This document shows, one piece after another, positions 51,712 to 58,300 of a stretch of 64,000 nucleotides of DNA. Position numbers and translations under genes: made by a program. Below the pieces are notes generated by a model. The model was not told the origin of the DNA. It saw only the letters and a program-made list of their open reading frames with translations, and made no database searches. Every line of letters starts with the position of its first letter. The first letter of the stretch is position 1. The DNA comes from Magallana gigas (lineage: Eukaryota). The stretch covers positions 14,570,001 to 14,634,000 of the forward strand of contig NC_088857.1 in the NCBI RefSeq assembly GCF_963853765.1. The letters run 5' to 3'.

Positions 51712-53754
51712 CTGATTAGAAATATCAAACATCAGGAAAAAACCTTCTCCCACTTCAAACAGAAGTTTTTCACTAATTAAAGTCAATGAATTTAAAATCA
51801 AAAGTGATTCAGCTTGTCAATTAGCATTTTCAACAAATTGCTCATAGTTGAAAAAAAAATGAATTTAAAATTTTCAAAATTGCACCCTAGGAGCAGAGGA
51901 CGATCATATGTGCACAAGATGTCCGCCTTTTACGAAAGTAAACAGAGAGATAATAAAATTAACGACGAAAATCTTTTTTATCACAAAATAATTGATGTAC
52001 TTTGAGTAAATAACGTGCAGAAGGGTCCCCATTGGAACGCTGTTAGAACTTAGTGGTGTAACACATAGATTGCCACAGTTATATAACAAAAAAACCCGAG
52101 TAAGTAAAGCTATGAGGCTGGTACCTCTATACACCAGTGCCTCTAATTAAACCAGTCCCTGATGTTTAAATCACTTATGTGAACAAAACTTATTCGTTTA
52201 ATTCGCTGCTCAACTTTTCATGCATTTTGTGGGAAATAACAACAATGATAGAATAAGACACAACTGGGGCCGGGTGGACCCTTTACACAGCATTCCTTTA
52301 TTCCGACTTGAGACGATTACGATCTGTCAATCCATTTTAACATCATTTGTAGTCCTACAAAACCTCTTAACACCTCTTTGTTGCAGGTATACAAGAACTG
52401 AGAAAAATTAGGCTAATGTGTTCAACACACCCTCCATCCCAAAAAATTCTCCTTTAGCTATAGATCTATGTCTAATTACATTTTTATAAACATTTAATCA
52501 TCTGTTTTCCTTATCCAGGAAATTTTATACATATAATTTACACTGGTACTCAAGTATACCAAGTGATTCATGTTTCAAAATTAAAAAAAAAAATCTTCTT
52601 GCCACCCAAAGTCAATGGCTTTCTACATAAAAAATTAAACTTTAAGATTTTCAAAGTAATGAATTTATCTAATTTACCTGTACATGTCAAAGCTGTGGCA
52701 TCTTGGTTGTCAAAATATTCCTTGTTAAATTTGTCAAATTTTTTTTTTAATATCACATTTCAAACACAAGTGTGGTCGAACAGTCACAGAATATATCAAT
52801 TTTGTTGTTAATACTCAAACAGGGCAATTAGACATTGAGGGAAAAGCTCTCGGCCCACATTAAGCTTTTTTCAATCATATTGAACCACTTTTGTTGATAT
52901 ATTTGAATAACAGGGCTGATATAAGCAGTCATCAAACAATTTTAGGACCCTTATTTTCCACTCCACTGAATTTGGATTACTCTTAAGTAATGGAATTCCA
53001 GTTTTAATATCAAATTTGGTGATTTACTTTATCCTGGTACAGTTCTGTCACTTTTGCAATACACAAACAAAACACACACACATATATAAAACCAAATTGG
53101 TCAAAACCGAGCACTAGTGTCTACCAAATTAATTTTTTGGGACTCCTCTTTTTTTATTCCTCCTGCCTCAAAGCAATCAAATACAGACAGATTAGGTCAA
53201 GATTTCACTACATGATGTCCAAAATACACCACCTGATTGAAAAATCATTCGTGATCATTTTGTCTGATAGTGGAGACTTTAACTGCCCCGTAATGTATTC
53301 TCTAAAGCGTACCCCGAAGTCGGACAGAACAAGGGCTGTGTAGGAAGGCGGAACAAGTCATGGACGACCCTAACCGTGCCCTAAGGGTACCAGGTCCTAT
53401 TATTATTGTACATTCACTACTCTACTACTGTTTACTTATGACTTAATGAAGCGTGCAAGGTATCGTTTAACAGGCATAAAGTAAACAGTAACTTGTCAGG
53501 CTCAACATGTGTCTTAACAGCTAATTAATTGGTCTATCATATCAGCTGTACTTCAGTACATTGGTACTTCACGCCCTCCCCCTAACAAATATAGACAAAT
53601 CTGAAGAATTCAAATGTTTTCCTTTTGGTTTTAGCATAGTTTAAGGGTGGCTCTGTCTTTTTCCTCTTGAAAATTTCAGCAAGGTATATATATAAACCTG
53701 CAACACTAAGAGCCATTCTTTGCCTGAATGTTTGGAGACATCTATAATTCATAC

Positions 53755-53950
53755 CTGAAGGCAGCTAACACGGTCTCGCACAGCCGATGACAATCGGCAC
53801 CGATCGCCGCCTGGTACGCACGGCTCGTGTTACAGTGGTACGACTTTGAACGTCTTGTCCAAGCTGTCAGGCTTCAGAAAACCACCAGATTAGACACCTT
53901 AAAGCTCTCTCAGTCTTTCTCTCTCTCTTTTCTTTCTCTCTTTCTTTTCC
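53755..53950 (-). other. candidate non-coding 5' exon / promoter of MYRF
   Basis: CpG-rich patch ending in cttcag|gtatga donor; no ATG in the CpG-rich part; preceded by a GA-rich tract. The 5' boundary is a guess. Confidence 0.4.
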
Positions 53951-55280
53951 TCTTTACCAACTCTCTAAATTACCATGCAATGGTGAATGGCGAAAAATAA
54001 AAATCCAATTCTTCATTTATAACACGGTTGTTTGAGGGTGCATCGGTGTTTGATTTCAAATCCATTTATTTGCTCTCAACTTGAAGGAGAACAGTTAAAT
54101 TGATGAAATAACAAACTGATTGATCACCCCATTTTTAATGGGTCTTTTTCAAACATTGAAATTCTTTTTTGTAATTTGAATGATGGTATGTACTCTTCTT
54201 TTCATGCATTACAATGAAACCAATCTTTTTTTTGCATAGACTTATTCAGGGGGTCACATTGTTACAATTAAGAGTTGACTAAAGTAAATAATACCCCCCC
54301 CCCCCAAAAAAAAAAAAAAAGAATAATCACCATTTAATGTTCTAAACAACAAAATTATTTAGTGCAGTTTTGTGATTTAAAAAAATGCAATTAACAAGAT
54401 TACTCATTATTCACCCTGACTGAAAAAATTAAGACTCTCTGTAATCATTTCTTTCATGGAGGGGGGAGGTATTGTTGAGATAGAGAAAAGTCACTTCAGT
54501 ATCTAAAAGAATCTTTAATTGTTAAATCTATACAATGTAAAACTTTTATATCTCCAGACCCATCAATTTTTGTCATTTATTTTATTGTAATGTACTGGCA
54601 GATCTTTCAAAGAGTTGCAAAATTTTAATCTATGCCGTCAACCCAGTTTCTACTAAGATATTGCTTCAACCTGGTTCACATCATGTCCCACAAAGCATCA
54701 ATCAAACTCAATGTCATCCTAAACCATTGATAAATCTGTTTACACTTCCTCCAACTTGAGAACACAGAATCCAATAACGATGTGCAAAGGGAAGTAACTC
54801 TCATTCATACGCCTGGATAAACGTCACAAAAATCACGATGCAGATAAAGAATGATTTAGCATTAATGGCAAACATTTGTCAAAAATTCAAACATGCAAAT
54901 GAACTTCGGTGTGCAATCATTCTTTAAGACTCAAGTACCAGGGGCCCCTGTCTTCGAGAATAATTAACACAAATATTTGGGTTTGAATATTCATTCATTG
55001 TAAGATCCACTAGGTAATGGTCTCCGTTACGTCAGGTAGTATTATCAAGAGAGTGAATGGTTCCTGAAATATACAGTCACCTAATCCCCACAACAATTTC
55101 CATATTTTCTGCAAATTTCTATACATTATTAGGCGACTGTCATTAAAAAGGAATTTCAAAACATATGGCTAAAAAAAGAGAAGAGAAAAAAAACCTGAAA
55201 TTATTATCTGATTTATGCTATATTTGAAACATTCATATCTCCTAGGTTGTTCTTAAAGTGTTAATTTAACATTATAAACC

Positions 55281-55283: not shown

Positions 55284-55370
<87 letters not shown>
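55284..55370. repeat. (CT)n microsatellite
   Basis: About 43 perfect CT units. Confidence 0.95.
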
Positions 55371-55372
<2 letters not shown>

Positions 55373-58300
55373 ATACAAATAACTTATTTAGCATCTTTCG
55401 GATAATGAACCAATAATTCCCTCTTGTTCTTTCAAACATAAATAACTGTTATTGTATCCTTTTCCATCTTTCAGATAATGAAACAGAACATCCCAAAGGA
55501 GATTCCAAACTAATTCAGTGCAGCAGACAATACCCATGAAAAAAGACTTAGAGAAGTACTTTTTTTTATTATTCATATATAACATGGATTTTATAAATAT
55601 AATTAAGAAAGCATGAAGAACCTACTGAGCTCTCACCAATATAGGTATAAACCTCAACAGAGACTCATTCTATTTTTATCACGATAGACATTCTGTCTTA
55701 TCACGAAAGCCATCTCAAGTTGATCTTAAAAAAAAGATAAGTGCATGTCAATAATTTTGATGAAAGTCCACACGCTGTACCAGACAAAATCTGACACCCG
55801 GCCTTTCCCAATCAGAACCTCTGATAATTAAATGGATGCACTAATTAAGTTTCCTCTGTAGCAGATGTAACAATTTCAACAATTCTAAGAATTATATCCA
55901 CCCAAGTGTGGGAAAATTCATCACTGCAAAGTTTACATACTGATGACGACTGAATTCTCCGGAAATATCTTTGTTTATTTATCAAAAGATATACTTTTGA
56001 ATTGATAAGGAAATAGAGAGCAATATGGGAAACTTGTTCTCATGCAAGCAGGAAAAGTGTTCATAGAAGAACATCAGGATTTTTAAGTAAAAAAATCAAG
56101 AATTCAATTTTTTTTTATTTTTTGTTTTCAAACTTTTGTTTTTAATTAGAAATACATGTACAATTAAACTTTAAGGAGATAAATTAATATCTTTGGCAAT
56201 TTCAGGTCTTTTGATTTTCTGAATATGTGAATTAGGCCACTATATAAGTCCCTTTATCCAAATGCAAATATTACATTTGACTCTTCCCTCTGCTACATGA
56301 TTTTAAAACCCAATTTTGATTTCATTTAATCAATAAAAATATTTTTCAACAAATACAAAAGTGATAGAATCAACTTTATAACTTTATTATTAATTAATGA
56401 ACACTTTTTATTTGTTCTGTGTACTAGAATTTCCCAGGTTGCCGATTCTACTATTTTAAAATTCCTATGCCCCTGGCACCAATACTTAAATGGGTGGTGT
56501 GAAAGATGTTGATTTCCATTTTACCATACCAGTAAAAATATCATTAGATTTTTAAATACCATAGTTGCCTTTACCGGTAGTATCTATGTAATTTATATTT
56601 TTTTGTATAAAAAATAGGAAGTGCAAGAGTTAATAAAGCACATCTAAAGTGCATACGGCACTGTGCACAGGGCACTGTGTTACTGAACAATTATAAGCAC
56701 AAAAGATAAAGGTAAAATGAATGTCTGTAAAGACATGTAATACTACTGATGCCATCAATCTCCTTACTCATTTGTCACCGATGTGTCGAAAGGTCCGTCT
56801 TCCTCCTTTTTGTACAAAATAGAAGATAATTACAAAATCTGACACCAGCCAGCCATAAACGGCTGAGGAAGTTGGCACGGTGCGAATAATTACATAGATC
56901 CACCCATGAAATAGGAAGCTCCCGCTGGCCAATTTCATCCCCCTGCGATGCATGTGATCGATAATTTGTGTTGTTTATAATCTGCCGAGATTTGCAGGTG
57001 ATCATTTAACAATACAATTTTCCTCATAATGAGATTTTGTAAAGTGAAAACGTTAACCTTCTACATATTAGTAATAATTAATATCAACTATTTCTTTTTC
57101 ACTTTTTTACTATTTGGGCGGGGTTTTCGTAATGTAGAACTCAAAAGGGTACCAATTTATCAAATTATCCTGAATTCTTATTGGAGATGAATGCGACAAG
57201 TATTAACATTACTGTGACATTCAACTTAAAGACAGGCTGAATTAAAACTTTATCAAAAAGTCTCCATCTTAGAGGGCCCTCAACAATGGGTAATAGCTTA
57301 CACAGGCACAACAAAATCCACTTTATGTTGACCACACCTACTGTTACATGCAACCATCAGTAAACGGCATTGTGTGTTATATTGTCAGTAAATGCAGTCC
57401 GTAATGTTGGTAGATGATTTTCAAGGTAGAGTTAGGTAAATAATTTTGTAATAATGGGGACACTATTTAAGTTTGTGTATTTTAGATTGAAATGGTAGAT
57501 ATCCCACAGTTAGGTCTAGTAGAAAAGTTCTAACATACCCTAAAATATTCCCGAGGCAATGACATGTTTCTGAGGTAATACCATCCAATATTTTTTGTGT
57601 TCTTTTATGGATCTAAAACACTTTTACCATACCAACCTTTAGTCTCTGTCTCAACCCCATCTAAACCTCATGTTTTGTTTTGCCAAAGATGGCACATAAA
57701 AACCATATTTGCTTCGTAATATAAACTAGGTAAGGAAATCAAAATTGATGCTGTTAATCATGTAGAAGAAATGATGATATTACATGTATCTTCTTTGTAT
57801 GCTGACCATTAACACTGTTCTAATGTCGAACTGATCGTCCATTTATTGCATGATGAGGACATAACTTTTACTTCACTTGCGCTCAATACAAACCTAAGAT
57901 CCAACGATGAATGTTCAGATTCCATTGTAAAAATGTACATATCATCATTTCATCATATAAAACAATTCAAATATAAGAAAAAATTTAAAAGTCTATCAAA
58001 TACTTCTGAACAATAAAATTTGTAAATTTCTAAACAAATACTCATCCGAGTAAGACACAATTCAACATCCAAACTAATTTTTTTCCTGAAATCTGTGAAA
58101 CTCATTTCGCACTTTTTTTACGCCTTAAATATTTCATCATGTAAAAACGATCTTTCCTGGAGTCATTATTACCTCAATATATATTTCACACCTTGTGGAA
58201 TACAACTATATGCTAATTAGTCAATTAATTAATTGAATTCCCCATACCTGTATCTGAGAATCTGTGTCAATTTGAAGCGATCCACAACAACACTATGTCA

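What the first reader, a model, noticed from the sequence alone, without database searches (positions are those of the whole stretch)
52118..56479. MYRF's own binding motif CTGGYAC is clustered around the MYRF 5' end: candidate autoregulation
Seen: 8 exact CTGGYAC sites on either strand in 4.4 kb (52118, 52543, 53034, 53387, 53811, 54935, 55777, 56473). Six more occur in the 5' introns (39710, 42636, 43080, 46076, 46764, 48323). By eye I found only one in 1-24700 (216, inside a MITE) and none in 57000-64000. A rough mononucleotide estimate at about 33% GC gives about 0.4 expected per 4.4 kb. Several sites fall inside the GC/CpG-rich candidate first exons. Established: CTGGYAC is the mouse MYRF ChIP-seq consensus, and the released N-terminal fragment acts as a homotrimer that can use multiple sites. 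The DNA-binding domain here is highly conserved. Inference: a positive or negative autoregulatory loop at an invertebrate MYRF locus.
Basis: partly seen in the sequence, partly recalled or inferred. Interest (0 to 1): 0.75.

Follow-up and report, generated by a model that had tools for sequence, protein, structure and literature searches.

The report
MYRF-motif cluster inside oyster MYRF gene
The Pacific oyster's MYRF gene holds far more copies of the seven-letter DNA word bound by vertebrate MYRF than chance allows, grouped in a large intron around an internal alternative start, which suggests but does not prove that the factor regulates its own gene, as reported for worm, human and yeast relatives.

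Summary
Eighteen of the window's 19 sites lie in 30833-56479. Eight lie in 52118-56479, where genome-wide density predicts 0.49 (P 5e-8). CTGGTAC is the most region-specific of all 7-mers (16 inside, 0 outside). The sites have unrelated flanks and mixed strands, and no one-mismatch variant is clearly enriched.

The location is misdescribed. The window is Magallana gigas, and MYRF runs on the minus strand from about 87.9 kb (outside the window) to 24.7 kb. The main start exons lie at 87.9 and 71.0 kb and have no site within 6 kb. The cluster fills the last 6.3 kb of a 20.6-kb intron. There it surrounds two minor alternative first exons (splice donors at 52676 and 51621), which give an isoform lacking the conserved N-terminal 37 residues.

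Self-binding is the best reading (about 0.5). The DNA-binding domain is 64% identical to a vertebrate one, and self-regulation is reported for worm, human and yeast relatives. Against it, worm MYRF-1 binds a different, GA-rich motif. Four distant orthologous loci show no enrichment, the pearl oyster only weak enrichment, and closer oysters could not be fetched. Binding is untested.

The parts
52118..56479 (.). Dense cluster of 8 CTGGYAC heptamers. CTGGTAC at 52118+, 52543+, 53034+, 53387-, 53811+, 54935- and 55777-; CTGGCAC at 56473+. It lies in the 3' 6.3 kb of the 20.6-kb intron between the exon at about 70745 and exon 2.
   Evidence: positions, contexts; 8 against 0.36 in shuffles; P 5e-8 at genome density; unrelated flanks.
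39710..48323 (.). Six more CTGGTAC sites in the next two introns: 39710-, 42636-, 43080-, 46076+, 46764+, 48323-.
   Evidence: exon map.
30833..35740 (.). 30833- forms the splice donor CTG|GTAC of exon 31006-30839. 32170- and 34119- (CTGGCAC) are intronic. 35734+ lies inside coding exon 35841-35665.
52676..53257 (-). Alternative first exon 1c. Its donor is at 52676 and it reads ATG TAC AG| joined to exon 2, giving 'MYR-CLPEE...'. That is the N-terminus of C. angulata isoform X5 and resembles Pecten isoform X2. The 5' limit is approximate: RNA contigs end near 53257 and read depth steps down near 53300.
   Evidence: joint 50157-52676; contigs 52720-53257; depth table.
51621..52705 (-). Alternative first exon 1d, or a retained stretch. 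Its donor is at 51621 (ATG AG| giving 'MR-CLPEE...'). One RNA contig runs 51621-52705 and contains sites 52118 and 52543.
   Evidence: joint 50157-51621 in 3 reads and 2 contigs; record 2.
49898..50158 (-). MYRF coding exon 2 (residues 38-124 of isoform X1), the acceptor for all four alternative first exons.
   Evidence: exact match to P0164; 32 reads continue from about 50158 into a sequence found at 70745.
24707..47056 (-). The remaining 20 coding exons of MYRF isoform X1, from exon 47056-46883 to the last exon 24808-24707. They include the NDT80 exon 34505-34284 and the Peptidase_S74 exon 31978-31754.

Best explanation
The CTGGTAC heptamers are selected cis-regulatory sites forming an intragenic cluster of like sites in the oyster MYRF gene. 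They are densest around an internal alternative promoter (first exons 1c and 1d). The most likely binder is the released N-terminal trimer of MYRF itself, so that MYRF activity feeds back on MYRF transcription.

Shown: the locus-specific, word-specific enrichment; the gene structure; the internal first exons; the conserved DNA-binding domain.

Inferred: that oyster MYRF recognises CTGGTAC, that it occupies these sites, and the direction of the effect. Positive feedback is favoured by analogy with yeast Ndt80 and human MYRF.
For: 1. Enrichment of a word specified in advance at the gene specified in advance.
- 8 sites against 0.49 expected in 4.4 kb, 18 against 2.9 in 25.6 kb, and 20 against 7.1 over the whole 63-kb gene, all at genome density.
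- No shuffle reaches the observed counts.
- CTGGTAC ranks first of about 8,000 7-mers against the rest of the window. It is the top word that is not simple sequence under Markov models.

2. The pattern fits selection on double-stranded DNA.
- Flanks are unrelated and there is no tandem or dispersed repeat.
- Strands are mixed, 10 to 8.
- None of the 21 one-mismatch variants is clearly enriched.
- The base before the heptamer is G or C in 11 of 18 sites, as in the mouse logo (P 0.02).

3. The candidate binder is plausible.
- Only one NDT80-domain place was found in the genome.
- The DNA-binding domain matches mammalian MYRF structures at E 1e-73 to 1e-101 and is 64% identical to shark MYRF. The blocks [33 protein letters not shown] and [12 protein letters not shown] are identical. 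I place K339, R454 and R478, needed for binding, in these blocks by context, without mapping the numbering.

4. Location.
- The cluster brackets the alternative first exons 1c and 1d.
- Sites 53387 and 53811 lie in the two most GC- and CpG-rich 200-nt bins of 52-56.6 kb, just upstream of where the exon 1c contigs end.

5. Precedents.
- Exogenous MYRF raises endogenous MYRF mRNA in ARPE-19 cells (PMC13043084).
- Ndt80 binds MSEs in its own promoter (PMC6289461).

6. Hints in relatives.
- The Haliotis MYRF intron carries CTGGTAC-ctc-CTGGTAC, the 3-nt-spaced dimer reported for mouse. Pinctada carries CTGGTACCTGGTAC.
Against: - No binding, chromatin or reporter data exist for any mollusc.
- The only invertebrate MYRF motif determined, for C. 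elegans, is GA-rich and tripartite rather than CTGGYAC.
- CTGGCAC, which mouse MYRF binds equally, is not enriched here: 2 of 18 sites against a 36% genome share.
- All oyster sites are isolated singletons. The mouse-type dimer is not over-represented genome-wide: 3 copies against 5 for the reversed control.
- Gene-wide enrichment is absent in Haliotis, Sinanodonta, Mactra and Owenia. In Pinctada it is uncertain because the flanks are also rich (4 sites in 20 kb).
- The close pairs in relatives look like short tandem duplications.
- The two main promoters have no site within 6 kb.
- One site is a splice donor and one is coding, so these two may be there for other reasons.
Confidence: 0.5

Rival explanations
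1. The heptamers are real cis-regulatory sites, but an oyster factor other than MYRF reads them, or they form part of a composite element. The cluster would then be an ordinary intronic enhancer or alternative-promoter module, and the match to the vertebrate MYRF consensus would be coincidence.
For: - C. elegans MYRF-1 uses a different, GA-rich motif, so MYRF specificity can drift.
- Only the T variant is enriched.
- There are no dimers.
- A second word, ATCACGA(A), is also over-represented in the same 25 kb: 8 against 1.6 expected. This hints at other inputs.
Against: - The word was specified in advance from the gene's identity. An unrelated factor would have to share exactly this heptamer and pile it up at exactly this gene, which is a very unlikely coincidence.
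- Bujalka et al. found no other known factor matching this motif.
- The oyster DNA-binding domain is far closer to the vertebrate one than distant family members are.
Confidence: 0.2
2. The enrichment has no function. It would be a local mutational or historical quirk, for example long-decayed duplications, or a chance extreme in a 564-Mb genome that drew attention because the gene is MYRF.
For: - No conservation was found in four distant orthologous loci, and the Pinctada signal is ambiguous.
- The boundaries of the 4.4-kb stretch were chosen after seeing the sites.
Against: - Tests with no chosen boundary still give P 5e-5 to 2e-6 for the whole gene.
- About 0.05 such 8-site clusters are expected in the entire genome.
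- Flanks share no similarity, so decayed duplications would have had to preserve only the heptamer, which itself implies selection.
- The 238 kb around the cluster is at background density.
- Other clusters seen in listings are plain tandem arrays.
Confidence: 0.2
3. The word acts at the RNA level in the pre-mRNA, for example as a cryptic 5' splice site (CTG|GTAC) or a binding site for an RNA-binding protein.
For: Site 30833 is in fact used as the splice donor of exon 31006-30839.
Against: Ten sites lie on the sense strand and eight on the antisense strand. RNA from the stretch laid (49.9-55.9 kb) comes from the minus strand almost entirely, so nearly half the sites would not exist in the transcript.
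Confidence: 0.03

Closest known systems
Mouse MYRF target enhancers with the CTGGYAC motif (Bujalka et al. 2013, PMC3742440)
   Same: The 7-nt core is identical, with a preference for G or C just before it. Sites often lie in introns of target genes, and a single copy can suffice.
   Different: The mouse sites were defined by ChIP-seq, pull-down and reporter mutation, whereas here there is only sequence. Mouse uses both C and T at position 5 and shows paired sites 3 nt apart. The oyster locus is almost all T, with no pairs.
[quoted passage not shown]
   Same: An invertebrate MYRF bound at its own gene, interpreted as autoregulation.
   Different: The worm evidence is ChIP-seq, mostly within 1 kb upstream of start sites. 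The worm motif is a GA-rich tripartite element bound by one trimer (PMC13167726), not CTGGYAC.
Human MYRF raising endogenous MYRF mRNA in ARPE-19 cells (PMC13043084)
   Same: Positive effect of MYRF on transcription of its own gene.
   Different: It was shown by over-expression and qPCR. The passages I read define no cis-elements, and the effect could be indirect.
Yeast Ndt80 positive feedback through MSEs in the NDT80 promoter (PMC6289461)
   Same: The same DNA-binding fold family. The factor binds its own gene to lock in a developmental switch.
   Different: The motif differs (Bujalka et al. give it as CACAAA[A/G]). There are a few promoter-proximal sites rather than 16-18 spread over 25 kb of introns, and Ndt80 is a soluble monomeric factor.
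Internal, self-regulated promoters that make truncated isoforms, such as ICER from the CREM gene (recalled from memory, not checked here)
   Same: An intronic promoter carrying a cluster of sites for the gene's own factor family, giving an N-terminally shortened product.
   Different: For oyster MYRF, neither responsiveness of the internal promoter nor altered activity of the short isoform is known.

Membership tests
MYRF (vertebrate-type) binding sites | Exact match to the CTGGYAC core, with G or C preferred just before it | tested here: met
   There are 18 exact cores in 30.8-56.5 kb. G or C precedes 11 of the 18, against 34% expected. The consensus was read from PMC3742440.
MYRF (vertebrate-type) binding sites | Both Y variants used, and paired sites 3 nt apart over-represented | tested here: not met
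   16 sites have T and 2 have C, against a 36% genome share of C. There are no close pairs in the oyster locus. The dimer occurs 3 times genome-wide against 5 for the control.
MYRF (vertebrate-type) binding sites | Physical binding by the MYRF N-terminal trimer | not testable with these tools
   This needs EMSA, DAP-seq or CUT&Tag with the oyster protein.
MYRF (vertebrate-type) binding sites | A cognate DNA-binding domain with conserved DNA-contact residues in the same genome | tested here: met
   There is a single NDT80_PhoG place in the genome. The domain is 64% identical to shark MYRF and matches 5yhu and 5h5p at E 1e-101 and 1e-73, and the blocks that carry basic residues are identical. 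I map K339, R454 and R478 to these blocks by context only.
Transcription-factor autoregulatory element | Sites for the factor enriched in its own gene beyond background | tested here: met
   20 sites against 7.1 expected over the whole gene (P 5e-5). 8 against 0.49 in the cluster (P 5e-8). Local and shuffled controls agree.
Transcription-factor autoregulatory element | Sites lie in a promoter or enhancer of the gene | tested here: inconclusive
   The sites are not at the main promoters, at 87.9 and 71.0 kb. The cluster surrounds the minor first exons 1c and 1d, which are supported by splice joints. No start-site or chromatin data are available.
Transcription-factor autoregulatory element | Sites or enrichment conserved in orthologous loci | tested here: inconclusive
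   Pinctada has 15 sites against 4.5 expected in the gene, but its flanks are also rich. Haliotis, Sinanodonta, Mactra and Owenia are not significant. Isolated dimers occur in Haliotis and Pinctada. Other oysters could not be fetched.
Transcription-factor autoregulatory element | Expression of the gene depends on the factor through these sites | not testable with these tools
   This needs reporter or knock-down experiments.

The most novel reading that the evidence does not exclude
The heptamer cluster may be a MYRF-responsive internal promoter. When MYRF is active, it would switch its own gene to the 'MYR-CLPEE' isoform (exon 1c, donor at 52676). That isoform lacks the 37-residue acidic N-terminal segment conserved from oysters to vertebrates. 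A similar 'MYR-CLP' start is annotated in scallop. This would be an isoform-switching feedback, possibly self-limiting, rather than simple amplification. It would also mean that the CTGGYAC specificity predates vertebrates and that the nematode motif is the derived state.
Probability: 0.15. Interest if true: 0.7.

Novelty: new member of a known kind. Interest (0 to 1): 0.5.

Why it matters
MYRF is a membrane-tethered, self-cleaving transcription factor. It is needed for vertebrate myelination and nematode larval timing, and it is mutated in human birth defects.

Two questions are open. One is whether its DNA specificity is conserved outside vertebrates. The other is whether self-regulation is an ancestral property of the Ndt80/MYRF family.

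The oyster locus offers a very clean natural test object. It holds 16-18 identical heptamers in unique contexts, inside the factor's own gene, next to an internal promoter. If oyster MYRF binds them, the vertebrate motif dates back at least to the common ancestor of molluscs and chordates, the GA-rich nematode motif is derived, and autoregulation joins yeast, worm and human as a family-wide theme. If it does not, the locus points to an unknown factor with a strikingly sharp specificity.

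Tried and rejected
- Repeat origin: rejected. There are no direct, inverted or tandem repeat families at the sites. Flank alignments are no better than random controls.
- General GTAC or compositional bias: rejected.
- Orthologous loci of close oysters. Look-ups for M. gigas, C. angulata, Saccostrea, Ostrea, C. virginica, Pecten and Patella proteins found no record.
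- Wider genomic background. There is therefore no empirical genome-wide null for non-repeat clusters or for promoters.
- Mouse-type 3-nt-spaced dimer genome-wide: no excess.
- Sox-like ACAAWG near the sites: no excess, 5 against 5.3.
- GC content around the sites: only slightly raised (0.367 against 0.343; 9.5% of random site sets reach it).
- Polymorphism test. None of the 40 best-supported variant positions in four RNA runs falls in the seven covered sites, but only 0.3-0.8 would be expected and 54 variants were not shown, so it is uninformative. Runs labelled as other organisms were 97-99% identical, too close to test conservation.
- The second enriched word, ATCACGA, is not significant after correction for about 8,000 words.
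- Earlier notes of the scan added nothing on this motif.

Full report
**Identity of the window.** The window is G000:C5:14570001-14634000, on a contig of 57,274,926 nt. M. gigas isoform X1 (P0164) matches the window's minus strand exactly, exon by exon. Pfam places NDT80_PhoG on exon 34505-34284 and Peptidase_S74 on exon 31978-31754. The NDT80 exon is the only NDT80_PhoG place found in the 564-Mb genome.

**The observation.** An exact scan gives 19 CTGGYAC sites, against 6.4 +/- 2.6 in dinucleotide shuffles, with a largest value of 15.
- Eighteen of the 19 sites lie in 30833-56479. There are none in 223-30832 and none after 56479.

**Enrichment against the genome.** Genome-wide the motif occurs 63,219 times (0.112 per kb), and CTGGTAC alone 40,764 times (0.072 per kb).
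- Eight sites in 4,362 nt are expected 0.49 times (P 5e-8).
- Eighteen sites in 25.6 kb are expected 2.9 times (P 2e-9).
- Anchoring a window at every site in the genome, only about 0.05 clusters of this density are expected by chance anywhere.
- Region-wise shuffles agree: 8 against 0.36, and 18 against 2.56, with 0 of 300 shuffles reaching the observed counts. The rest of the window is depleted, 1 against 4.0.

**Specificity of the word.**
- CTGGTAC is the single most region-specific of all 7-mers: 16 copies inside 30.8-56.6 kb and 0 outside. Under first- and third-order Markov models it is the top word that is not simple sequence.
- The 200 kb flanking the window show background density. 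The one exception is a 125-nt-period tandem array about 85 kb to the left of the window start, at negative window-equivalent coordinates.
- None of the 21 one-mismatch variants is clearly enriched, and that includes CTGGCAC.
- The flanks of the sites are no more similar to each other than random controls. Repeat finders find no family at the sites.
- The strands are mixed, 10 to 8.
- The base before the core is G or C in 11 of 18 sites, as in the published [G/C]CTGGYAC logo.

**Where the cluster really lies.** I laid poly(A) RNA reads and RNA contigs on 49900-55899. Transcription there comes almost entirely from the minus strand.
- Most reads that reach the upstream (5') edge of exon 2 at about 50158 (32 in two runs) continue into a sequence absent from the window. 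I found that sequence at window-equivalent coordinate 70745. It encodes ...DLERYLGDGKM, the end of the N-terminal 37 residues.
- Two further first coding exons lie at 70986 (isoform X2, MVVNFPAG...) and 87862 (isoform X1, MEVLADD...).
- The gene therefore spans at least 63 kb.
- The main promoters have no site within 6 kb. The nearest sites are at 77229 and 77693.
- Over the whole gene, with no chosen boundaries, there are 20 sites against 7.1 expected (P 5e-5). For CTGGTAC alone there are 18 against 4.6 (P 2e-6).

**An internal promoter inside the cluster.** Splice joints link exon 2 to donors at 52676 and 51621.
- The first reads ATG TAC AG|, giving 'MYR-CLPEE...'. This is exactly the N-terminus of the annotated C. 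angulata isoform X5. Pecten maximus isoform X2 also ends its first exon in 'MYR' before CLP.
- The second gives 'MR-CLPEE...'.
- Both isoforms lack the first 37 residues, an acidic and hydrophobic segment conserved in mussel, clam, abalone, Lingula, amphioxus and fishes.
- RNA contigs for exon 1c end near 53257, and read depth steps down near 53300.
- Sites 53387 and 53811 lie just upstream of that point, in the two most GC- and CpG-rich 200-nt bins of 52-56.6 kb.
In the poly(A) runs, 3 reads use the 51621 joint and none the 52676 joint, against 32 for the distal exon. The 52676 joint is seen only in contigs of two other runs.

**Classes of site.** Using the exon map:
- 35734 lies in a coding exon.
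- 30833 is the used splice donor CTG|GTAC of exon 31006-30839.
- The other 16 sites are intronic.

For:
- The word is the mouse ChIP-seq consensus, validated there by pull-down and reporter mutation, with no other known factor matching it.
- The oyster DNA-binding domain matches the mammalian MYRF structures 5yhu and 5h5p at E 1e-101 and 1e-73. It is 64% identical (79% similar) to shark MYRF over 200 residues, and the blocks that carry basic residues are identical. K339, R454 and R478 are the residues needed for binding. I place them in these blocks by context, without mapping the numbering.
- Self-regulation recurs in the family. Ndt80 binds MSEs in its own promoter. C. elegans MYRF-1 ChIP peaks sit on myrf-1 and myrf-2. 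Human MYRF raises endogenous MYRF mRNA.

Against:
- The nematode motif is a GA-rich tripartite element, not CTGGYAC.
- Only the T variant is enriched in the oyster.
- All sites are singletons, and the mouse-type dimer shows no genome-wide excess.

**Conservation.** Only distant loci could be fetched.
- The Pinctada imbricata gene has 15 sites against 4.5 expected (first-order model P 7e-5). Its 20 kb of flanks hold 4 sites, so that genome's own density may simply be higher.
- Haliotis, Sinanodonta, Mactra and Owenia show no gene-wide excess.
- The Haliotis MYRF intron carries CTGGTAC-ctc-CTGGTAC followed by CTGGCCA. Pinctada carries CTGGTACCTGGTAC. Each is unlikely by chance, but each looks like a short tandem duplication.

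**Verdict.** The statistical anomaly is real, word-specific and locus-specific. The best explanation is a cluster of like binding sites read by MYRF itself, centred on an internal alternative promoter (confidence about 0.5). The rivals are another factor (0.2), a functionless quirk (0.2) and an RNA-level signal (0.03). As a concept, MYRF/Ndt80 self-regulation is known. The oyster case is a new, purely sequence-based member with an unusual intragenic architecture.

Noticed in passing
window 32906-55706: The word ATCACGA (extended consensus yTTATCACGAA) occurs 8 times in 30.8-56.6 kb, 7 of them on the + strand, and nowhere else in the window. Three copies are exact TTATCACGAA, a 10-mer with only 1,280 copies in the genome. 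Against the local 238 kb the excess is 8 against 1.6 (P 2e-4), which does not survive correction for about 8,000 words. It may be a second cis-element in the same regulatory domain.
   Followed up: partly
window 55284-55370 and 53914-53955: A perfect (CT)43 microsatellite and a CT-rich tract lie inside the heptamer cluster. C. elegans MYRF-1 binds a GA-rich tripartite element (PMC13167726). CT/GA repeats also occur elsewhere in the window (61133, 62957), so this may mean nothing.
   Followed up: no
outside the window, window-equivalent 70745-70809, 70942-70986 and 87818-87862 (G000:C5:14640745-14657862): The first 37 codons of MYRF lie beyond the window's right end. There is a shared exon at 70745-70809 and two alternative first coding exons, at 70986 (MVVNFPAG..., isoform X2) and 87862 (MEVLADD..., isoform X1). 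The gene therefore has at least four alternative starts and spans at least 63 kb.
   Followed up: yes
window 28976-29830: A 146-nt tandem repeat (5.9 copies, 87% matches) lies in a MYRF intron. Its unit is full of TGACCT/AGGTCA words arranged as inverted repeats. In the Pinctada MYRF locus, AAGGTCA and AGGTCAA are among the most over-represented 7-mers (88 and 82 copies). This suggests a shared repeat family rich in sequences like nuclear-receptor half-sites.
   Followed up: no
L023:73727-73750 (Haliotis rufescens MYRF intron after the exon at 72302-72511): The sequence is CTGGTAC-ctc-CTGGTAC-CTGGCCA: two exact MYRF cores 3 nt apart, the spacing reported for mouse, followed directly by a third near-core, in a GC-rich unique context. 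About 0.002 such dimers are expected in the 108-kb locus, but it reads like a 10-nt tandem duplication.
   Followed up: partly
P0010 (Pecten maximus isoform X2) and P0163 (C. angulata isoform X5); window 52676-52690: Scallop and oyster both have an annotated isoform whose alternative first exon ends in Met-Tyr-Arg joined to CLP(E/D)E. The internal start that skips the conserved N-terminal segment therefore seems older than the oyster lineage.
   Followed up: partly
G000:C5, about 84.6-85.4 kb to the left of the window start (negative window-equivalent coordinates; locus L003): A tandem array with a period of about 125 nt carries 7 CTGGTAC and 1 CTGGCAC on one strand. It shows that dense clusters of this word elsewhere in the genome are repeat-borne, unlike the MYRF cluster.
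   Followed up: no
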